Source: Octopus sinensis
Taxonomy: Eukaryota
Assembly: GCF_006345805.1 (NCBI RefSeq)
Contig: NW_021825367.1
Location: forward strand, 1-15,852
Length of the DNA: 15,852 bases
Direction: 5' to 3'
Shown: positions 1 through 14,452 of the stretch, piece by piece
How positions within the stretch are numbered: the stretch's first letter is position 1
How the letters are laid out: each line of letters begins with the position of its first letter
Made by a program: the position numbers and the translations under genes
The notes under the pieces: model-generated
Told to the model about the DNA's origin: nothing
What the model saw: only the letters and a program-made list of their open reading frames with translations
The model's database searches: none

Positions 1-194
1 TATGTTCATGAAGCCTGTCAGTTTTGTCCTTCTCATCCACATTTCATTAAATGATATCAAAATACAGATAATAATAAGAATAATATTATAATAAAAAAGG
101 TGGGATAACACACCGCCTTTTTTACTTTCATCTTATTTCTCGGGTGATTCTTGAAGCAATTCATGAGGACTTAACTTGAAGGAGGTAAAAGCCT

Positions 195-427
195 AGCGGC
201 GATCTGGCAGAAACGTTAGCACGTCGGGCGAAATGCTTAGCGGTATTTCGTCTGCGTTACGTTGTCGGTTCAAATTCCGCCGAGGTCGACTTTGCCTTTC
301 ATCCTTTCGGGGTCGATAAATTAAGTACCAGTTACGCACTGGGGTCGATGTGATCGACTTAATACCTATGTCTGTCCTTGTTTGTCCTCTCTGTGTTTAG
401 CCCCTTGTGGATAATAAAGAAATAGGT
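195..427 (+). mobile_element. tRNA-type SINE, family M (central domain resembles the MetaSINE Meta domain), near full length
   Basis: A-box-like TGGCAGAAACGTTAG, B-box-like GGTTCAAATTCC, central GACTTTGCCTTTCATCCTTTCGGGGTCGATAAATTAAGTACCAG, tail ending GAAATAGGT. The same core recurs in many places in the window. The Meta-domain assignment is from memory. Confidence 0.8.
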
Positions 428-508
428 AAAAACCCATGTCTTTCAAAGCTCTGAATTACGTCTAGCGTACAATTTACTTCGTGCCTAAGCCATTATAAGT
501 TATAAATA

Positions 509-826
509 GGGTAAAGACCCCCTTCGGTCATGAATGACCTTGGGATTGTATCTAGAAAGTTCCCATCCGAGGCACAAGTCTGGGCAAGGTTGTTTTTGTG
601 GAAGAGCAGCAGTCGCCCATGCATACCAGCCTCCCCTCTCCACGCCACTGATGTTATCCAAGGGAAAAGCAAAAACCGATACAGCTTGGCACCAGTGACA
701 TCGCAACTCATTTCTACAGCTGAGTGATCTGAATCAACGGGAAATAGAATGTCTTGCTCAAGAACACAACATACATCTCAGTCCGGGAATCGAAATCGGT
801 GCCCTAACCACTGAGCCATTCGCCTT
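509..826 (-). mobile_element. tRNA-derived SINE with CORE-like middle and a distinct 3' tail; head internally deleted
   Basis: Minus strand reads GGCGAATGGCTCAGTGGTTAGGGCA (A box) ... TTTCGATTCCCGG (B box) ... TTGTGTTCTTGAGCAAGACA ... CACTCAGCTGTAGAAATGAGT. The middle matches the SINEs at 9338-9540 and 10976-11250. Confidence 0.7.
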
Positions 827-888
827 CACTTTTATATGATAGTAGTAACAATGGTTTAGGATTTTGGCTCGAGACGGGCTCTTTTAAT

Positions 889-1004
889 GGGAAGAAGTAG
901 TCGATTACTTCGACCATAACACTTGGACGATACTTTATTTCATCGACCCCGAAAGAATGAAATACAAAGTTGGGACCTGAGCGAGATTTGAACTCAGAAC
1001 GTAG
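889..1004 (-). mobile_element. Family M SINE fragment, diverged
   Basis: Reverse complement of the core: ATCGACCCCGAAAGAATGAAA ... GATTTGAACTCAGAACGTA. Confidence 0.7.
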
Positions 1005-1089
1005 GATCAGAATAAATATTGAAAAGCATTCTTTTGCAAACTCTCTTATGATTGTACTAAACCATCGTCATCATCAATTTTTTTTTATT

Positions 1090-1164
1090 GTTTCAAATTC
1101 CACCGAGGCAGACCTCGCCTTTCATAATTTCAGGGTTGATAAAATAAATGTCAATCAAGTACTG
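1090..1164 (+). mobile_element. Family M SINE fragment
   Basis: TTCAAATTCCACCGAGGCAGACCTCGCCTTTCATAATTTCAGGGTTGATAAAATAA aligns to 269-325. Confidence 0.65.
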
Positions 1165-1249
1165 TGCTAAAAAGGCAAACCGTTATTAATTGTTTCTTAT
1201 TTAGGTGTAATGTTAGTCTCAAGGTCAGTAATTTGAGGGAGAGGGGTTT

Positions 1250-1380
1250 CGTCTATCATACAGATTCCAGTCCTTGACAAGTACTTTATTTTGCTGACCT
1301 CGAAAGGATGAAAGACACAGACGATTTTAGAAGGATTTCAAGTCATAACGTAAATAATCGCAAAACATTTTGTTCGATAG
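1250..1380 (-). mobile_element. Family M SINE fragment, strongly diverged
   Basis: GTACTTTATTTTGCTGACCTCGAAAGGATGAAAG matches the reverse complement of the core; boundaries are approximate. Confidence 0.55.
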
Positions 1381-1423
1381 TCTAACAATTCTGCATATCC
1401 ATCCTTATTTGCTGAAACACACA

Positions 1424-1530
1424 GGACGAAATGTTTAGCAGCGTTTCGTTCATCTTTACATTTCGAGTTCAAATACCAGGTCAGTTTTGCTTTTCAACCT
1501 TTCGAGGTCGATAGAATAATACCAGTCAAG
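1424..1530 (+). mobile_element. Family M SINE fragment
   Basis: CGAAATGTTTAGCAGCGTTTCGTT ... GAGTTCAAAT ... TTTGCTTTTCAACCTTTCGAGGTCGATAGAATAATACCAGT. Confidence 0.65.
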
Positions 1531-1557
1531 GTATTCAAGTATCCAGTATTCAATAAT

Positions 1558-1939
1558 GGAAGCACTCAGTCGGTTACGACGACGAGGGTTCCGGTTGATC
1601 CGAATCAACGGAACAGCCTGCTCGTGAAATTAACGTGTAAGTGGCTGAGCACTCCACAGACACGTGTACCCTTAACGTAGTTCTCGGGGATATTCAGCGT
1701 GACACAGAGAGTGACAAGGCCGGCCCTTTGAAATACAGGTACAATAGAAACAGGAAGTAAGAGTGAGAGAAAGTTGTGGTGAAAGAGTACAGCAGGGATC
1801 ACCACCATCCCCTGCCGGAGCCTCGTGGAGCTTTAGGTGTTTTCGCTCAATAAACACTCACAACGCCCAGTCTGGGAATCGAAACCGCGATCCTATGACC
1901 ACGAGTCCGCTGCCCTAACCACTGGGCCATTGCACCTCC
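1558..1939 (-). mobile_element. Full-length young tRNA-derived SINE, family R (copy A); 3' part of a composite element
   Basis: A box TGGCCCAGTGG and B box GGTTTCGATTCC. Hand alignment to 11319-11700 gives 12 substitutions in 382 bp and no indels. Confidence 0.9.
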
Positions 1940-2049
1940 GCTATCGTGATATTATCCGTAGTGTGAAAATAAAACTTCCAAAGACCCCTACTCATACGAC
2001 GGCTAAATACGCTAATGACTTAATGATTAGAGCATTCGTCTCACAATCG
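1940..2049 (-). repeat. Captured 110 bp flank: inverted copy of 11209-11318
   Basis: 1941-2049 is the exact reverse complement of 11209-11317 (109/109); 1940 and 11318 differ by one C/T. Confidence 0.95.
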
Positions 2050-2119
2050 GTCTGGGAATCGAAACCGCGATCCTATGACTGCGAGTCCGCTGCCCTAACC
2101 ACTGGGCCATTGCGCCTCC
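2048..2119 (-). mobile_element. Isolated family R tRNA-like head, the 5' end of the composite; TSD ATTCAATAAT at 1548-1557 and 2120-2129
   Basis: Minus strand GGAGGCGCAATGGCCCAGTGG ... GATTCCCAGACCG, then switches to the captured flank. A 10 bp direct repeat brackets 1558-2119. Confidence 0.9.
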
Positions 2120-2204
2120 ATTCAATAATACCACACAACGTAATCAATTATCCTTTCTCAACAAAGTTTCAGGCCTTGTGCCTGCAACAGAAAGGACTGT
2201 TACT

Positions 2205-2395
2205 GCGGGGAGGCACAGTTGCTGAGCGCATCAGACAAAATGCGGTATTTTGTCAGTCATTACGTTCTAAGTTCAAATTCCGCTGAGATCAGATTTGCTT
2301 TTTATCCTTTCGGGGCTCGATAAAATAAGTGCTAGTTGAGCACTGGGGTCAATGTAATCGACTAACCCCATCTTCCAAAATTGTTGGCCTTGTGT
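2205..2395 (+). mobile_element. Family M SINE, diverged, with type-2 tail
   Basis: TTACGTTCTAAGTTCAAATTCCGCTGAG ... CCTTTCGGGGCTCGATAAAATAAG ... CACTGGGGTCAATGTAATCGACT ... CAAAATTGTTGGCCTTGTG. Confidence 0.75.
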
Positions 2396-2463
2396 CACAA
2401 TTTGAAACCATTATTATTGCAAGGCGGCGAATTGTTTGCCCGCCGGTCAAAATGTCTTTCCCC

Positions 2464-2604
2464 GTTGCATTCGGAGTTGAAATCCTGCCGGGGTCAACTT
2501 TACCTTTCAAACTTTTAGAGCCGATGAAATATGTACCAGTTGAGCCCTGAGGTCAATGGAATCAACTAGTCTCCTTCCTAAAAATTTCAGGCCTTGTGCC
2601 TATA
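2464..2604 (+). mobile_element. Family M SINE 3' fragment with type-2 tail
   Basis: GAGTTGAAATCCTGCCGGGGTCAACTTTACCTTTCA ... GTACCAGTTGAGCCCTG ... AAAATTTCAGGCCTTGTGCCTATAG. Confidence 0.7.
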
Positions 2605-3041
2605 GTAAATTGTGCCTATATCATGATTCTTACAACAAAGGGTTAAAAGAAACACACTTCGTTGAATTTTGCACTTTACTTTGCTTCTGTGGTGCACAGA
2701 TTCCCCTAACCCGGTAAACCACAGACGACTGGAATAAGCTAACCTAACAGCAGTCAAGTGAACGAAACGGAACGAAACAGGTCCCTATTCCCTATTCTAC
2801 ACAACCCAGAGTTCTTTCATATCATTATCTCTTGCTCTCACCATGATGTCTCTAATGAGACAGCTGTTCATCATTTCAAACATATGTTCCGCCATATATT
2901 CAAAGACGTGTAGCGAGAGACTATCTACAAGCACGCACACGCACGTGTCCATACACAAATGCAAGACAACCCCGCCCCCCCCCACACACACATCGTATAT
3001 TTTATATATTTCATTCTTATAGTGTTTTTCTTCTTTCCAGC

Positions 3042-3124
<83 letters not shown>

Positions 3125-3372
3125 GTATATCTATCTCTATGTCTGTCTATTTGTCTGTCTGTGCAAATATACACATGGTTATATATATACTAATACGCAC
3201 ACATACACACACACACATATATATATATATTTGTGTGTGGTGTGTATATGTATATATACATATTTGTGTTTGCATATGTATATGTATGCATGTATGTGTG
3301 TGTGTGTGCAATATATAGACAAACCTACCTACACATACATTTATATGGACATTCATATATATATATATATAT

Positions 3373-3410
<38 letters not shown>

Positions 3411-3466
3411 TATATATATATGTGTGTATATGTGTATATGTATATATGTATATATGTATATATGTA

Positions 3467-3538
<72 letters not shown>

Positions 3539-3621
3539 TATAGATAGATATATATGTATATATATAGATATATATGTATAATATAGATATATATGTATAT
3601 ATATATAGATATATATATAGA

Positions 3622-3659
<38 letters not shown>

Positions 3660-3770
3660 TATAGATATATGTATATATAGATATATGTATTTATATAGAT
3701 ATATAGATATATATGTATATATAGATATATGTATTTATATAGATATATAGATATATATGGTATATAGATA

Positions 3771-3810
<40 letters not shown>

Positions 3811-3900
3811 AGAGAGAGAGAGAGAGAGAGAGAGATATACATATATATGTATGTATGTATGTATATATAGGATATACAGAAATATACGCATGTATGTATG
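3042..3900. repeat. Compound microsatellite block: (TCTA)n, (AC)n, (AT)n, (TCTA)n-(AT)n-(ATAG)n, an ATATAGATATATGT-like minisatellite, (AG)n, (ATGT)n
   Basis: Direct reading; (TCTA) about 20 units at 3042-3124. Confidence 0.95.
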
Positions 3901-4034
3901 TACGTGTGTAGATAAAGGCGGCGTAGAAGTATCCATACGCAGTCAGACAAGTGGATCACCTGTTTTGAAGAGGGAACCTTTAATCAAGTTACCAAACTCT
4001 TTCTTCCTTACATGTTTACAACACCGCAGGGTTA

Positions 4035-4134
4035 CTCTCTCTCTCTCTCTCGCACACACACACACACGAACTTCACAAACACATACATATATAAAACTTA
4101 CTCGGAAAAGGATCCGTGGCGTTCGATCATATAA

Positions 4135-4184
<50 letters not shown>

Positions 4185-4350
4185 CACACACATACCTACA
4201 TACATGCACACACACTCACATACACATAAGCACTGATACGCACAGACACACGCCCACACACATACACACAAACAAATATATACAGACAAATAGATAATAT
4301 GTGCGTGTGTAAATGTCCATAGTTTTACGTTCAGATCCATGTGTGTATGT

Positions 4351-4382
<32 letters not shown>

Positions 4383-4400
4383 TTGTGTGTATGTATGTAT
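4035..4400. repeat. Compound microsatellite: (CT)n, (AC)n, (AT)n, (GT)n
   Basis: Direct reading. Confidence 0.9.
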
Positions 4401-4544
4401 ACGGCACTCAACATGCACTGACATTCAGACACGTTATACGCATGAGGAGAAAATGTGAAACACGCATCAAGGAACAAAATTCAGCCAACACTCTTTAAGT
4501 GCGTGTGCCTAATCAGGTGTGCACCTGTCCCTAGGTGTGTATAC

Positions 4545-4576
<32 letters not shown>

Positions 4577-4658
4577 GCGTCCGTGTGTCCGTGCGTGCAT
4601 GTTTGGGAGCATATCAGCCTAGTCACACCTAGAGACTTGATAATATACGTTATACTGC

Positions 4659-4748
<90 letters not shown>

Positions 4749-4793: not shown

Positions 4794-5454
4794 TCCGTCA
4801 TCAGCCCAGGAGAGTGAGATCTGCTGACTGAGGTGCCTGTCCAGCCTTCACAAACATATATATTTACATTGAAATCTATTCACTGATCACCGTAATTAGA
4901 AATATTAAATTTCTAAATGTCTCAAAGAGACATGAGCGGTGGTGGAGCGATGGAGTGGTTGTATACTGACAACCTGGGTTAAGACCCAGAAACATGCATG
5001 TCCTCAGGTGTGAATCTTGGCTGGTGAGGGTGCTTGCCTCCCCTTCACAAATATAAGGACAAAGGAAATGTGTCAAAGCCGACAGGAAGCGGCGATGCTT
5101 CCTAGGGCTAAACAGCGGTGGTGTAATTCCCATACGGGACTGTCACGTTATGTTGACAGTATACAACCACTATATATATATAAGTAATTATATAGAAGTA
5201 AATAACTATATTATTATTTTTTTTCGATTTATTATTATTATTACTAGTATTGTTGTTATACATACATACATACATACATACATACAAGTATATGTAATGA
5301 TAATAATAAGTGGATGTAAAGATATGAACAAAATAAGAATAAATAAAAACAACAACAAAAACAAATTACATGAACGTATATAAACAGAAAATACAAATAT
5401 TACAGGCCTCCCCCCCATACACACACTAAATAAACATAGGCGCACATAGAGATA

Positions 5455-5702
5455 TAAGCATGCGCAAATGAAGACATACAATAGAAATACAAAATGGCGG
5501 ACAGTTAGTAAGGAGAGACACAAATAAGAAAGAAGAAAACAAAGGACCACTGATGCGGTCACAGTAGTGTGACGAAAAGAACTCTGGCCGAAATAAGATT
5601 AAGATTATGTAATAAATAAATAACACTGAAGCAAGTAACACCAATATATAGTGCATCTGTTTTTATTAGCTAACTGGCAAAATGACCGTTCCTAAATATA
5701 AC
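5455..5702 (-). repeat. Unclassified interspersed repeat, copy 1
   Basis: Minus strand shares collinear blocks with 11780-11997: ATATTT.GG.ACGGTCATTTT, AATAAA..CA..GCACT, CAGAGTTCTTT, ACACT.CTGTGACC, CCATTTTGT, GCATGC. Confidence 0.6.
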
Positions 5703-5704
5703 AA

Positions 5705-5935
5705 TATACACACACACACGCATATATATATATATATAATATATATATATATATAATATATATATTATATATATTATATTATATATATAATAATATATAT
5801 ATATATTGCCTACACACACAAAGAAACATGTGTACATACATTAATACATAAATACGTAATGCATACGCTAATATACTATAAGTGTGTATATAAAATGTTA
5901 TTCCGAGTTTCACGTAACAGTCCTTCGCACGTGCG

Positions 5936-5975
<40 letters not shown>

Positions 5976-6391
5976 ACACACACAAAACCCTGTGCGCGCG
6001 TGTTTATGGAGTTTGCGAATGAATCTAAATCAATACAGCTTTTTTTTTCAAGACGTGCCTTCATAGTTTTTACAGCAGAGAGCCATAACTTAACTCTTTG
6101 CACTTAATGGCCTTTTCCCCACCACCGCCACCACTACAACCACCATTAACAAGAGTCAGAAAAACAACAACAACAACAACAACAACAACATCTCTATGCT
6201 CTATGAGTACCACTCATGCCTATACTCTACAAATACTAGAATGGTAAACGGGCAAGAAATGAAGTGGCTGACAGGAACTTCAACCAAACAAACAATAGGC
6301 TTCTTGTTTTCGAACCATAACGATATTCGTGCACACACACACGCGCGAACGCGCACTCAATACATATGCATATACATACCTTATTATATAT

Positions 6392-6436
<45 letters not shown>

Positions 6437-6469
6437 TATATATGTATATATTATATATATATATGTATA
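5705..6469. repeat. Scattered microsatellites: AT-only tracts (5722-5805, 6380-6469), (AC)n (5938-5985), (CAA)n (6165-6190)
   Basis: Direct reading; unique sequence lies between the tracts. Confidence 0.85.
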
Positions 6470-6981
6470 TATACAATTAAGGGCTCCTAAATAAAGATGC
6501 CGAGTGCTGGGAACACAAAAAGGGGATGAATTTATCGAGAGTGAAAATCAAAAACGTTTTACCGATAACTTTAACAACTCGTACCGCGGTTTCTGCTTCT
6601 TTCTAGCAAAAACAGAATATGTTTGCTAAGGCCAGCTTCATCAGCGAGTCGCCGAATTTAATCGAGGTCTGCAGCGATGTGGGACTATGTGTTAAACCCG
6701 ACTACTAGCAGATCTTAACTTTTCAAATCTCTGCAAGATCTGCTAGTAGTCGGGTTTAACACATAGTCCCACATCGCTGCAGACCTCGATTAAATTCAGG
6801 CGACTCGCTGATGAAGCTGGCTTAGCAAACATATTCTGTGTTTTGCTAGAAAGAAGCAGAAAACCGCGGTACGAGTTGTTAAAGTTATCGGTAAACGTTT
6901 TTGATTTTCACTCTCGAAAATTCATCCCCTTTTTGTGTTCCCAGCACTCGGCATCTTTATTTAGGAGCCCTTAATTGTATA
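6470..6981. mobile_element. 512 bp foldback (MITE-like): two 247 bp inverted arms around an 18 bp spacer
   Basis: Arms 6470-6716 and 6735-6981 differ by six 1 bp indels and no substitutions; spacer is AACTTTTCAAATCTCTGC. The inverted repeat is certain; the MITE identity is inferred. Confidence 0.7.
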
Positions 6982-7164: not shown

Positions 7165-7374
7165 TAAATTAATAAATAAAATATATGCATACATACATAC
7201 ATATATGTACGTACCTACATCTACATGTATATATACATGCATATATAAATATATATATTTGTGGTGTCCTGTACTCACATATATATTTATATATGCATGT
7301 ATATATACATGTAGATGTAGGTACGTACATATATGTATGTATGTATGTATGCATATATTTTATTTTTTAATTTA
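7165..7374. repeat. Inverted duplication of microsatellite-like DNA: 92/96 bp arms, 22 bp spacer
   Basis: 7165-7256 versus the reverse complement of 7279-7374: one substitution and one extra CATA unit. Confidence 0.9.
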
Positions 7375-7379
7375 TATAT

Positions 7380-7418
7380 ATGTATATATATGTGTGTGTG
7401 TGTATGTATGTATAAACA

Positions 7419-7454
<36 letters not shown>

Positions 7455-7631
7455 TGCATAAACATACATGAATGTATGCATGTGTATGCTGGTAATATAT
7501 ATATTCATGCGTACTCACACAAATATATATATATATACACACATATACATATATATATATGTGTGTGTGTAAACACACATGCACACACACATAGCATATG
7601 TAAATGCATGCATACGTATATATATGCATGT

Positions 7632-7680
<49 letters not shown>

Positions 7681-9581: not shown

Positions 9582-9919
9582 TCTGCACTTTAGTGTATCT
9601 ACGTATTCACACATACCACACACTCACATATACACGCACACATAAATCTGTGAATATACGTATATAATACGAGGGTGGATTGTGGAGAGAAATTCAAAAG
9701 TGCTGAAGATAGATAGGTCTAAGCTCCAGGAAGCCACGAAGTGTCTCCCAAACCCGTTTGACATATGGATGACATTTGAAGTGATTAACAAGTTTCTTTC
9801 AGACGCTACCGTAGTTTGACATTTCAGCGCCTAGACAAAGTAGAACCGATTCTTCGGCCTTCAAGTCTACAGCTTAAATACGATGTGGTATGGGGATAAT
9901 GGCCACTTATCAGATCCAT

Positions 9920-10043
9920 TTATTATATATAATATATATATATATATTATATATATTATATATATATATAATATATATATATATTATATATATATATATA
10001 CATACACATATATCATTGCAATTACACAACACACACAATATGC

Positions 10044-10074
<31 letters not shown>

Positions 10075-10272
10075 CACACACACATATATATATATACATA
10101 TATGTACGTATACACACACACATTCACACACACGCATACGCACACACATACACACATACAAATCCAAACATATTTACAGATATGCATTGGAATGATATAC
10201 ATAGATATGCACATACACACACAGAGACACACACACACATACACACACACGCACGCGCACATACACACATAC
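9920..10272. repeat. Compound AT-only and (AC)n microsatellite
   Basis: Direct reading. Confidence 0.9.
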
Positions 10273-10565
10273 TCTGACTGACGCTCATGAACATAAATAC
10301 TTAGACCCATCAAGACAATCCTGATAAGTGTGTGTGTTTGTGTTTATGAGCTGAAGAGAAAACCTCCATATTGTTGCTCACCCAGCTACAGACGCATATC
10401 TCGTATAATACTTGTACAAACTGCTAGAAATTTATTTCCATGTATTATTTTATTCACTCTACTCATTCCTGTATTGAGCCCTTATTTGTATCTTAAGTCA
10501 TTTGGAATGTAGCATGTGAACTTGTATATACTAGAGTATATAAAAACTGGCCATCAATCGGTTAT

Positions 10566-11250
10566 GTGGACGAGCGTTCCAGTCGATCCGAGCTACAGAA
10601 CAGTTTTTTCTACTCTAGGTACAACGCCCGAATTTTTTTGGGGGAGTCGATTAGATCGACCCCAGTACGCAACTGGCACTTAATTTATCGACCTCGAAAG
10701 GATGAAAGGCAAAGTCGAACTCGGTGGAGTTTGAACTCAGAACGTAAAGACAGACGAAATACCTATTTCTTTATTACCCACAAGGGGCTAAACACAGAGG
10801 GGACAAACAAGGACAGACATAGGTATTAAGTCGATTACATCGACCCCAGTGCGTAACTGGTACTTAATTTATCGACCTCGAAAGGATGAAAGGCAAAGTC
10901 GACCTCGGTGGAGTTTGAACTCAGAACGTAAAGACAGACGAAATACTCAGAACGTAAAGACAGACGCCTTGAGCAACAGAACAGTCTGCTCGTAAAGTTA
11001 ACGTGTATGTAGCTGAGCACTCCACAGACACGCGTATCATTAACGTAGTTATTAGGGAGATTCAGCGTGACACAGAATGTGAAAAGCATGGCTCTTTGAA
11101 TTACAGGTAAAACTCGTTTTTGCCAGCTGAGTAGACTGGAGTAACCCGAGATAAAGTGTCTTGCTCAAGAGACACAAATCGCCTCCGAGAATCGAACTCA
11201 CGATCTTACGATTGTGAGACGAATGCTCTAATCATTAAGTCATTAGCGTA
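10566..11250 (-). mobile_element. Old tRNA-derived SINE (CORE-like middle, family R type tail), split by a nested insertion into 10976-11250 and 10566-10604
   Basis: Decayed head (TGACTTAATGATTAG ... GAGTTCGATTCTC), CTTGAGCAAGACACTTT middle, and a tail homologous to the family R tail. The tail resumes at 10566-10604 beyond the insert. Confidence 0.75.
10605..10975 (-). mobile_element. Family M SINE dimer (184 bp period) inserted into the old SINE; TSD ACAGAACAGT
   Basis: Direct repeat ACAGAACAGT at 10595-10604 and 10976-10985. Two cores 184 bp apart, plus a third 21 bp copy of CTCAGAACGTAAAGACAGACG at 10946-10966. Confidence 0.8.
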
Positions 11251-11316
11251 TTTAGCCGTCGTATGAGTAGGGGTCTTTGGAAGTTTTATTTTCACACTAC
11301 GGATAATATCACGATA

Positions 11317-11705
11317 GTGGAGGCGCAATGGCCCAGTGGTTAGGGCAGCGGACTCGCGGTCATAGGATCGCGGTTTCGATTCCCAGACCGGGCGTTGTGA
11401 GTGTTTATTGAGCGAAAACACCTAAAGCTCCGCGAGGATCCGGCAGGGGATGGTGGTGATCCCTGCTGTACTCTCTCACCACAACTTTCTCTCACTCTTA
11501 CTTCCTGTTTCTGTTGTACCTGTATTTCAAAGGGCCGGCCTTGTCACTCTCTGTATCACGCTGAATATCCCTGAGAACTACGTTAAGGGTACACGTGTCT
11601 GTGAAGTGCTCAGCCACTTACACGTTAATTTCACGAGCAGGCTGTTCCGTTGATTCGGATCAACCGGAACCCTCATCGTCGTAACCGACGGAGTGCTTCC
11701 ATTCC
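11317..11705 (+). mobile_element. Full-length young family R SINE (copy B) with 12 bp TSD AATATCACGATA
   Basis: TSD at 11305-11316 and 11706-11717; A and B boxes intact; ends CTTCCATTCC. Confidence 0.92.
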
Positions 11706-11779
11706 AATATCACGATATATGACATACATAAAATTATCATAATTCGTGTTTATGCATTTGCTTTGCAGGATACTATTAC

Positions 11780-13146: not shown

Positions 13147-13153
13147 TTTATTG

Positions 13154-13209
<56 letters not shown>

Positions 13210-13761
13210 GAGTGAAAGAGCAGTTCATGCCATCAAAGTGACACTGGGGTAAAATATACGAAGCCCAATATACCCATCATGACTACCCGTCTGATAAAGG
13301 TACACTAGGCACATGCATCACAACCAAATGTGCGCGACATAGTGATCTCATATCAAGATAAACAGCACATGACCTGCAGGTGGGGCCCAGTTAGAATTTT
13401 CTTCAGTTGAGTAGCCCATCCCGCTCAAAAAGTCCCTGAATAAGGGTGGTTTAAGGATGTTGAAAAACCACCCATGTTTCCAGAGGTGAATTATTCAAAC
13501 CCCAAAGAATCCCTCTCAACACATGGCTATGATGCTCCCCCACTACTTCTGCTCGTGATCAGAGATGCACATATCGTTAGCCACTAAGGGACATGCTCAA
13601 CTGTTTAGGTCAAACAACTGACAAGCAAATCTGTGGTATTGAGCAGAATATTTGCTGTATCCCATCTTTATACCAAGACAAAACAATGTACATGATAACA
13701 CTTCCAATCAGTTAAGATCAGAAGCCATGAGAGCCACTGCCTGGTACTGCATCAGGGCATT
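13210..13761 (-). mobile_element. (AAT)n-tailed retroelement, copy 2 (about 550 bp, non-coding; SINE or LINE 3' UTR)
   Basis: Flanked on both sides by (AAT)n (13148-13209 and 13762-13799). No tRNA-like head or ORF seen. Confidence 0.75.
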
Positions 13762-13799
13762 TATTATTATTATATTATTATTATTATTATTATTATTAT

Positions 13800-14452
13800 C
13801 ATCATAATATGTACTTTTAATCTGCATTCTGTTACACACACCTAGCGAAACACACCTAGCGTCTTAGGGAGAGTGAAGGATAAGAGCTATTACAGTATGA
13901 CTGTAAGCTTGGGGAGGTGAAGTGGCAGGGGCAGTAGCAAAATATCTTCATGTAATACAATACAGAAATTTAAATTTAAAAGATTTTTCTAAAGTTGTTG
14001 GCAGTATTTGTTAACACAATCTTTTGGATTTCTCTGAGACATGGTTCTCCTGGGATATTATCTCGTTGTTTTTGACATCCCTTTCTTATCATACCTAGGG
14101 CACCCACAATAATAGGATCATTTCTCGTTTTAAGATTCCACATCTTATGTATTTCAATTTCCAAATCCTTATATTTACTTAATTTATCAAATTCCTTTAC
14201 AGATATATTTTTATCAGTGGGAACACTTACATCAATTAGTCGACTAGTGTTTTCTTCTTTGTCTTTAATGACTACATCTGGTTGATTAGCCTGGATCGTT
14301 CTGTCGGTGTTGACTGGAAAATCCCAGAGGATAGTGACATTTTTACCTTCAACGACTGGCTCGGGATGATGTTCATACCAGTAAGTAGGAGTGTTGATTT
14401 TGTAGTGTTTACCTATTTTCCAATGTAAATACTGTCCTATCCTAGCATGGCA
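13800..14452 (-). mobile_element. 5'-truncated RLE-type non-LTR retrotransposon (R4/Dong-like) with about 175 bp 3' UTR and (AAT)n tail
   Basis: RLE coding segment followed by a UTR ending GATTAAAAGTACATATTATGATG(ATA)n. Confidence 0.85.

What the first reader, a model, noticed from the sequence alone, without database searches (positions are those of the whole stretch)
1548..2129. Composite SINE carrying the locus-specific 5' flank (with half a TSD) of another SINE 9.2 kb away
Seen: on the minus strand the structure is tRNA head (2119-2048), then 110 bp identical to 11209-11318 except for its last base, then a full SINE (1939-1558). The whole is bounded by one TSD, ATTCAATAAT. The captured piece contains the left half of copy B's own TSD (AATATCACGATA, at 1942-1953 as reverse complement) and a cut-off piece of the old SINE head that is continuous only at 11.2 kb. 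The 11.2 kb locus is therefore the donor. The junction has a 2 bp CG overlap, and both sequences carry TTGTGAG next to it (CCGGGCGTTGTGAG versus TACGATTGTGAG). Inference, model 1: a break just after the head of a pre-existing SINE was repaired by microhomology-primed copying from the nearby inverted locus, resolving in the homologous SINE. Model 2: a chimeric RNA (5' transduction plus template switch) retrotransposed locally. Either way a Pol III promoter now sits in front of captured DNA, a route to new dimeric SINEs.
Basis: partly seen in the sequence, partly recalled or inferred. Interest (0 to 1): 0.75.

Follow-up and report, generated by a model that had tools for sequence, protein, structure and literature searches.

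The report
SINE with flank copied from neighbour
An octopus SINE carries an internal 180-bp patch copied from the flank and head of another SINE 9 kb away, most likely a scar of DNA break repair or a replication slip, so it is a tidy single example of a known process and not a new mobile element.

Summary
On the minus strand, 2129-1548 reads: target-site duplication (TSD), SINE head (positions 2-74), 108 bp identical to 11209-11316, a full 387-bp SINE, TSD. The donor is the 11.2-kb locus (B). There the copied piece runs continuously into an older SINE and ends in B's own TSD.

The spacer occurs three times in the 2.72-Gb genome: at B, at A, and on an allelic contig carrying the identical composite. 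So this is a one-off, not a mobile subfamily.

My best reading (about 0.6): a simple SINE already at A broke, or stalled replication, near position 74. The body-side end invaded the nearby inverted SINE B by homology and copied B's head plus 106 bp of flank. It then rejoined the old head through a 2-bp CG microhomology.
- For: the donor is only 9.2 kb away, among about 300,000 copies.
- For: A's body shares none of B's seven private substitutions.
- For: a low-coverage relative appears to have the A junction but no spacer.

The rival is a chimeric RNA retrocopy (about 0.2). Two TTTT runs in the spacer and zero progeny argue against a new dimeric SINE. Read-level proof of the junction is still missing.

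The parts
2120..2129 (-). 5' copy of the TSD of locus A (ATTATTGAAT). The last T may instead be SINE position 2.
   Evidence: Read directly. It matches 1557-1548.
2048..2119 (-). Head1: SINE positions 3-74, with the A box at 2109-2099 and a B-box-like motif at 2066-2055. It differs from B's head only at position 42 (a CpG to CpA change).
2048..2049 (-). Junction: the CG shared by SINE positions 73-74 and by 11209-11210. This is the only microhomology at the join.
   Evidence: by direct reading.
1942..2049 (-). Captured spacer, identical at 108 of 108 positions to 11209-11316. It holds about 34-54 nt of the antisense head of an older SINE, then unique flank, then B's left TSD copy at 1953-1942. 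Two TTTT runs lie at 1974-1971 and 1969-1966.
1555..1941 (-). Full-length SINE2 (387 nt). It has 13 differences from B's SINE, and none of B's seven private states is present.
1548..1557 (-). 3' copy of the TSD of locus A. The ATT at 1557-1555 could belong to the SINE tail or to the TSD.
11209..11316 (+). Donor stretch: the 5' flank of SINE B, ending in B's left TSD copy at 11305-11316.
11317..11705 (+). SINE B, with an ATTCC tail. Its right TSD copy, AATATCACGATA, follows at 11706-11717.
10971..11262 (-). Older SINE of another family (different tRNA-like head, related 3' module). It runs unbroken across 11209, which shows that locus B is the ancestral context.
   Evidence: other copies (L018, L042, L028) align continuously from 11242 to 10971. 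family D17.

Best explanation
This is a DNA-level templated insertion into a SINE that was already at A.

Proposed steps:
1. A simple SINE had inserted at A and made the ATTATTGAAT TSD.
2. Later, a double-strand break or a collapsed replication fork occurred near SINE position 74.
3. The 3' end on the body side invaded the homologous, inverted SINE B 9.2 kb away.
4. It was extended through B's head (positions 74 to 1) and on for 106 nt into B's 5' flank.
5. It then dissociated and was joined to the old head end through a 2-bp CG microhomology.

The net result is a 180-bp inverted templated insertion, made of B flank plus a second head, inside one TSD. This corresponds to synthesis-dependent strand annealing with template overrun, or equivalently a two-step replicative template switch of the MMBIR type.

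Shown here:
- The structure.
- The direction B to A.
- That the composite occurs only once in the genome.
- The junction.
- That A's body shares no B-specific substitution.

Inferred:
- A pre-existing simple SINE at A.
- The position of the break.
- The order of invasion and joining.

The composite is not a functioning dimeric SINE.
For: 1. Proximity. The family has roughly 3x10^5 copies, judged from summed contig depth over the SINE of about 1.5x10^7 against about 50 for single-copy flanks, and at least 4,524 first-look candidates. Yet the template lies 9.2 kb away on the same contig. A randomly targeted retrocopy would land that close with probability about 7x10^-6.

2. One junction is invisible because it lies in register inside the SINE homology. 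The other is a 2-bp microhomology. That pairing is the signature of homology-initiated, end-joining-resolved repair.

3. Substitution pattern. B has seven non-majority states, at SINE positions 116, 122, 159, 239, 256, 288 and 359. A has none of them, and A and B share no derived state anywhere in the 387 bp. A's SINE matches unrelated copies at 99% but B at only 97%. A rough likelihood ratio of about 5 (range 2-23) favours 'only spacer plus head2 copied' over 'whole 495 bp copied'.

4. The spacer is 108/108 identical although it has the same CpG density as the SINE (7 per 108 bp against 26 per 387 bp).

5. Contigs of run X16 (organism D, about 8x) include a 190-nt contig at 2098-2287 with zero mismatches. 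That is A's flank, TSD and SINE head. The same run has no depth at all over the spacer bins at 1966-2039. This suggests a SINE at A without the spacer.

6. The spacer has two TTTT runs, so a Pol III transcript could not carry it.

7. The composite is 100% identical on a second contig, C11093, which differs by a SNP and indel cluster at 2658-3209.
Against: - No read or contig was shown to span the head1-spacer junction. The spacer contigs listed for X1 and X15 are B-type.
- In X1 the B-type spacer contig has ordinary single-locus depth (49 against 48-56). That is not what a spacer present at both A and B in two doses predicts.
- Head2, which must come from B in this model, already differs from B at 4 of 74 positions while the spacer shows 0 of 108. 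Three of the four are CpG to TpG changes, so this is possible but awkward.
- The substitution-based likelihood ratio is weak.
- The link between A and B rests on one 15.8-kb unplaced contig rich in microsatellites.
- RT template-switch chimeras were noted by this scan elsewhere in the same genome, which raises the prior of the RNA route.
- The tool itself warns that the gap in X16 is not proof of absence.
Confidence: 0.6

Rival explanations
1. Chimeric retrocopy, the reader's model 2. A Pol II read-through RNA containing B's 5' flank and SINE B was reverse-transcribed at site A. At the position corresponding to 11209, the reverse transcriptase jumped (CG microhomology) to position 74 of another SINE RNA and copied it to its 5' end. 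The whole then integrated with one new TSD.
For: - A single clean TSD surrounds the whole composite.
- A 2-bp microhomology fits an RT template jump.
- This scan noted a 5S-SINE chimera and a mixed SINE trimer, each inside one TSD, elsewhere in this genome.
- A and B carry similar numbers of private changes (6 and 7), as expected if both date from about the same time.
- Run X17 (organism E) has a contig that leaves the alignment exactly at 2120. That is compatible with an empty site.
Against: - Landing 9.2 kb from the source has probability about 7x10^-6 under random targeting.
- The 5' partner is cut at position 74 of 387, not at a natural RNA 3' end.
- The spacer's TTTT runs rule out a Pol III template.
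- All seven B-private changes would have to post-date the event, while the spacer stayed unchanged in both lineages.
- X16 seems to have the A head junction without any spacer.
- There is no other progeny of B with flank.
Confidence: 0.2
2. RNA-templated repair. The logic is the same as the best explanation: a pre-existing SINE at A, a break near position 74, and a homology-guided extension. The difference is that the broken end was extended by a reverse transcriptase on a locally tethered nascent transcript that contains B in sense orientation.
For: It explains both the proximity and the abundance of RT-made chimeras in this genome. The product would be indistinguishable from that of the DNA-templated route.
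Against: There is no direct evidence. It is not known whether the region is transcribed, and no RNA run held the stretch ('0 on record as RNA'). It also needs an extra assumption.
Confidence: 0.07
3. Assembly or polishing artefact. The true A locus holds a simple SINE, and the 180-bp patch was introduced from B-locus reads.
For: - Both contigs are small and unplaced.
- The X1 spacer contig is B-type and at single-locus depth.
- No junction-spanning record was listed.
Against: - A junction with only 2 bp of overlap cannot come from overlap-based or k-mer-based assembly.
- The composite is identical on two contigs that differ by nearby SNPs and by a TE insertion.
- The spacer contig of X15 ends exactly at 2049. 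That is where an A-type and a B-type path would fork.
Confidence: 0.06

Closest known systems
Templated insertions from homology-initiated repair finished by microhomology or end joining (SDSA with overrun; MMBIR/FoSTeS; on a large scale the inverted-repeat-mediated DUP-TRP/INV-DUP rearrangements). Named from my own knowledge; templated-insertion and MMBIR papers are listed, e.g. PMC8421209.
   Same: - The template is a nearby inverted repeat.
- One junction is hidden in homology and the other has 2 bp of microhomology.
- The inserted tract is an inverted copy of local sequence.
   Different: - Small scale (180 bp).
- The homology is a 387-bp SINE pair 9 kb apart.
- The result is a SINE with a duplicated Pol III head and captured unique DNA.
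Non-allelic gene conversion and recombination between SINE copies. This has been proposed, beside RT template switching, as a way SINE modules are exchanged (PMC4758252, citing Nishihara 2006 and Kramerov & Vassetzky 2011).
   Same: DNA-level information transfer between two dispersed copies of one SINE family.
   Different: Ordinary conversion stays inside the homology. Here synthesis ran 106 nt past the SINE boundary and duplicated the head.
Chimeric retrocopies made by LINE reverse-transcriptase template switching (Buzdin et al. 2003, cited in PMC4758252), and 5' transduction.
   Same: Two sequence sources lie inside one TSD, and upstream flank of a source element is carried along.
   Different: - The 5' partner is an internal fragment, not a full small RNA.
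- The flank is not at the extreme 5' end.
- Source and target are 9.2 kb apart.
- The substitution pattern does not link SINE2 to B.
Octopus tRNA-derived SINEs (Ohshima & Okada 1994: OK, OR1, OR2, cited in PMC4758252).
   Same: A tRNA-promoter-type head, high copy number, TSDs and a short-repeat tail, in an octopus genome (the organism is named).
   Different: I could not compare sequences with the published consensi, so the family name is open.

Membership tests
LINE-mobilised tRNA-type SINE (the elements themselves) | Internal Pol III A and B boxes in the head | tested here: met
   TGGCCCAGTGG at positions 13-23 and GGTTTCGATTCC at positions 56-67. This is a motif match only.
LINE-mobilised tRNA-type SINE (the elements themselves) | Head recognisable as a tRNA | tested here: not met
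   ARAGORN found 0 genes. There was no tRNA hit in Rfam at E<=1.
LINE-mobilised tRNA-type SINE (the elements themselves) | Many dispersed copies with individual TSDs and a simple-repeat tail | tested here: met
   29 copies with 8-14-bp TSDs and (ATTCC)n tails. At least 4,524 candidates.
Templated insertion by homology-initiated, microhomology-resolved repair or template switch | Inserted tract identical to a template nearby in cis | tested here: met
   108/108 identity. The template is 9.2 kb away on the same contig, inverted.
Templated insertion by homology-initiated, microhomology-resolved repair or template switch | One junction within homology and in register; the other with 1-5 bp of microhomology | tested here: met
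   The spacer ends exactly at B's flank/SINE boundary and continues in register into the SINE. The other junction shares only CG.
Templated insertion by homology-initiated, microhomology-resolved repair or template switch | A recipient allele without the insertion exists or existed (a simple SINE at A) | tested here: inconclusive
   X16 has the flank+head contig at A but no spacer depth. This rests on low coverage and contigs only, and the tool warns that a hole proves nothing.
Chimeric retrocopy by RT template switching | One TSD around both parts | tested here: met
   ATTATTGAAT at 2129-2120 and at 1557-1548.
Chimeric retrocopy by RT template switching | The 5' part is a complete small RNA ending at its natural 3' end | tested here: not met
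   Head1 stops at position 74 of a 387-nt SINE. There is no tail, no poly(A) and no CCA.
Chimeric retrocopy by RT template switching | The 3' part is a direct copy of the source element and shares its private mutations | tested here: not met
   None of B's 7 private states is present in A, and there are no shared derived states. This is still compatible if the event closely followed B's insertion.
New mobile dimeric or composite SINE subfamily | Several TSD-bounded copies of the same composite | tested here: not met
   The spacer has only three hits: B, A, and A's allelic contig.
New mobile dimeric or composite SINE subfamily | Transcribable as one Pol III unit (no internal terminator) | tested here: not met
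   Two TTTT runs in the spacer and none in the SINE. Terminator function is inferred from general Pol III knowledge.

The most novel reading that the evidence does not exclude
Flank-overrunning template switches between neighbouring SINE copies, DNA- or RNA-templated, are a recurrent process in this octopus genome. They place Pol III heads in front of foreign DNA and so feed the visible module shuffling among its SINE families. On this view, the locus is that process caught before any amplification.
Probability: 0.12. Interest if true: 0.6.

Novelty: new member of a known kind. Interest (0 to 1): 0.3.

Why it matters
SINE families evolve by swapping modules. Two routes are debated: reverse-transcriptase template switching and DNA-level non-allelic recombination (PMC4758252). 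This locus is a datable case with the donor identified. In it, a Pol III head has been put in front of unique DNA plus a second SINE, and the evidence leans to the DNA route. By itself it is a single, apparently immobile scar. Its value is as a worked example and as a search image: head, then a foreign spacer ending in someone else's TSD, then a full SINE, all inside one TSD. A genome-wide count of such composites, with the distance to each donor, could show which route dominates.

Tried and rejected
- **tRNA identity of the head.** ARAGORN and Rfam found nothing. Only promoter-box motifs support the head.
- **Processed tRNA-like RNA as acceptor.** I considered that head1 ends at the natural 3' end of a processed tRNA-like RNA, which would have favoured an RT jump. 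There is no cloverleaf call and no CCA, and the cut lies inside what would be the acceptor arm. Unsupported.
- **TTGTGAG as the crossover.** Rejected, because the junction lacks GGGCG.
- **B derived from A.** Rejected. Other copies of the older SINE align unbroken across 11209, and B has its own complete TSD.
- **Shared minor subfamily.** Variants shared with single other copies (for example L018 shares 122A and 288A with B) are what top-hit selection among about 10^5 copies would give by chance.
- **Chromosome-placed allele.** None was found. A's flank occurs only in C1838 and C11093, and B's flank only in C1838. An 11-kb query was swamped by a 660-bp repeat.
- **Read evidence.** High-copy SINE contigs dominate, and the tables list neither the A-type junction nor a 180-bp-skipping joint. 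This leaves no verdict on the junction or on zygosity. The depth argument in X1 is ambiguous because the dosage of B is unknown.
- **Substitution-pattern likelihood.** It only weakly favours the repair model.

Full report
**What is there.**
Locus A runs as follows:
- TSD ATTATTGAAT at 2129-2120.
- A SINE head at 2119-2048, which is SINE positions 3-74.
- A CG at 2049-2048 that belongs to both neighbours.
- 108 bp at 2049-1942 identical to 11209-11316.
- A complete 387-nt SINE at 1941-1555.
- The same TSD at 1557-1548.

BLAST gives 482/495 identities between A and 11209-11703, plus a second hit of head1 on B's head at 72/73. The repeat finder reports the same 495-nt inverted pair at 97%. Locus B is an ordinary insertion: TSD AATATCACGATA at 11305-11316 and 11706-11717, and an ATTCC tail. 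The left TSD copy of B lies inside A at 1953-1942.

TTGTGAG is a coincidental similarity next to the junction and is not the crossover.

**Direction.**
The first 34-54 nt of the spacer are the antisense head of an older SINE that occupies about 10971-11262 on the minus strand. Other copies of that older family (in L018, L042 and L028) align without a break from 11242 to 10971, that is, across 11209. The sequence is therefore continuous only at B. With B's half-TSD inside A, this fixes B as donor and A as recipient.

**Uniqueness and reality.**
The genome has 2.72 Gb in 13,516 contigs.
- The 110-bp query hits three places: B, A, and C11093:38278-38386.
- C11093 is collinear with window 1-4681 at 99.0% and carries a 100% identical composite.
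- It differs by a cluster of SNPs and indels at 2658-3209.
- At the point matching window 4681, it continues into a repeat that is 99% identical to dozens of loci.

I read the two contigs as alleles separated by a polymorphic transposon insertion. C11093 ends before the B-equivalent position. The window is the whole of contig C1838. Neither A's flank nor B's flank has a chromosome-placed copy. The result is a one-off, not a subfamily. A junction with 2 bp of overlap, present on two contigs, is hard to get from an assembler.

**The SINE family.**
- A full-length query gives at least 4,524 first-look candidates, and the scored copies are 97-99% identical.
- Summed contig depth over the SINE is about 1.5x10^7 against about 50 for single-copy flanks. 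That suggests on the order of 3x10^5 copies.
- Twenty-nine copies show 8-14-bp TSDs, a start at GTGGAGG and (ATTCC)n tails.
- ARAGORN and Rfam do not call a tRNA, but an A box and a B-box-like motif lie at positions 13-23 and 56-67. Head1 therefore holds a complete promoter.
- Positions 1-193 and 196-385 also occur separately in other, more diverged elements. The older SINE next to B shares the 3' module (family D17).

**Which mechanism: proximity.**
With about 10^5 potential templates or sources, the donor lies 9.2 kb away. A randomly targeted retrocopy lands that close with probability about 7x10^-6. A mechanism that depends on proximity is therefore required.

**Which mechanism: substitutions.**
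I polarised the 13 A/B differences on 57 other copies.
- B has seven non-majority states (positions 116, 122, 159, 239, 256, 288, 359), all downstream of position 115.
- A has six (positions 2, 8, 41, 73, 197, 374).
- A and B share no derived state.
- A's SINE is closer to unrelated copies (99%) than to B (97%).

So nothing but the spacer ties SINE2 to B. That is expected if only the spacer and the second head were copied from B and the body is the old A element. If the whole 495 bp were copied, all seven B changes must have come later, while the spacer, which has equal CpG density, stayed at 0/108 in both lineages. A simple Poisson model gives a likelihood ratio of about 5 (range 2-23) for the partial-copy model. 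This is weak. The model also has its own tension: head2 differs from B at 4 of 74 positions. Three of those are CpG to TpG changes on the same strand.

**Which mechanism: terminators.**
The spacer contains two TTTT runs and the SINE contains none. From general knowledge of Pol III termination, a Pol III RNA could not carry the spacer, and a transcript from head1 should stop before SINE2.

**Which mechanism: reads.**
- **Spacer coverage.** The spacer bins at 1966-2039 are covered in X1 (organism A) and X15 (organism B). They have zero depth in X16 (organism D, about 8x) and X17 (organism E).
- **X16.** It nevertheless has a 190-nt contig at 2098-2287 with no mismatch, which is A's flank, TSD and SINE head. 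If the hole is real, D has a SINE at A without the spacer. That is the allele the repair model predicts and the retrocopy model forbids.
- **X17.** Its contig follows 2301-2120 and then continues for 61 nt unlike head1, which is compatible with an empty site.
- **X1 and X15.** The listed spacer contigs of both runs carry B-type letters. The X1 contig runs on into B's upstream sequence at single-locus depth (49 against 48-56). The X15 contig stops exactly at 2049, where an A path and a B path would fork.

None of this shows the A junction directly, and the tool warns that holes and depths in contigs prove little. I count it as suggestive only.

**Which mechanism: prior from this scan.**
Earlier notes record a 5S-SINE chimera and a mixed SINE trimer inside single TSDs in this genome. 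RT template switching therefore does happen here, which keeps the RNA model alive.

**Most likely mechanism (0.6).**
A simple SINE was present at A. A break or a fork collapse occurred near position 74. The body-side 3' end invaded inverted SINE B by homology. Synthesis ran through B's head and 106 nt of flank. The extended end was then released and joined to the old head through CG. This is SDSA with overrun or, equivalently, a two-step template switch: homology first, microhomology second. It is a small-scale analogue of inverted-repeat-mediated rearrangements.

Rivals:
- Chimeric RNA retrocopy (0.2).
- The same repair, but on a tethered RNA template (0.07).
- Assembly artefact (0.06).

**Comparison and novelty.**
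Templated insertions, gene conversion between SINE copies and RT-made chimeras are all known. PMC4758252 names non-allelic homologous recombination and RT template switching as the two discussed routes of SINE module exchange. This locus is a clean instance, probably of the first route. It is not a new kind of element. It has no progeny and an internal terminator, so the 'route to dimeric SINEs' remains a possibility in principle and is not shown here.

**Caveats.**
- There is no read-level proof of the junction.
- The A-B link rests on one unplaced contig rich in microsatellites.
- Copy samples were chosen by similarity to A or to B.
- Organism names were coded in the run tables.

Noticed in passing
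L006:1003-3500 (C11093:41002-43500), opposite window position 4681: The allelic contig carries a repeat of at least 2.0-2.5 kb that is 98-99% identical to dozens of loci. It starts exactly where the two contigs stop aligning and is absent from the window. It looks like a very recent, polymorphic transposon insertion and probably explains why the assembly forked here.
   Followed up: partly
window 10971-11262 (-), and loci L013, L018, L022, L028, L041, L042, L047: The young SINE is modular. Positions 1-193 and 196-385 turn up separately in older, more diverged elements. The older SINE next to B has a different tRNA-like head on a related 3' module (84% to 1606-1744).
   Followed up: partly
L057:1500-2154 (C30:9969236-9969890): A full SINE is followed after 1 nt by a 5'-truncated copy (positions 117-385) in the same orientation. 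Similar short extra pieces abut full copies on C22, C52 and C6.
   Followed up: no
window 257-428 and 10760-10931; also 10645-10762 and 10829-10946: A second abundant SINE-like family is present. One pair is inverted at 95%, and there is a 184-bp-spaced tandem pair at 96% just upstream of the older SINE at B.
   Followed up: no
window 13148-13808: A repeat of about 660 bp is 95-97% identical to at least 40 loci on many chromosomes. The family was not identified.
   Followed up: no
window 3000-4700, 5200-6500, 7180-7660, 9900-10300: There are long TA/TG/TATC microsatellite tracts. The Rfam 'miRNA' hits here (mir-5014, mir-297, mir-3149) are all below gathering score and are palindromic simple repeats, not genes.
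   Followed up: yes
window 1934, 1901, 1869 (SINE2 positions 8, 41, 73) and 2080 (head1 position 42): All three CpG transitions in the second head are C to T on the SINE sense strand within 66 nt. Head1 has one on the opposite strand at the neighbouring CpG. This could be ordinary CpG decay or deamination of single-stranded repair intermediates. There are too few sites to tell.
   Followed up: partly
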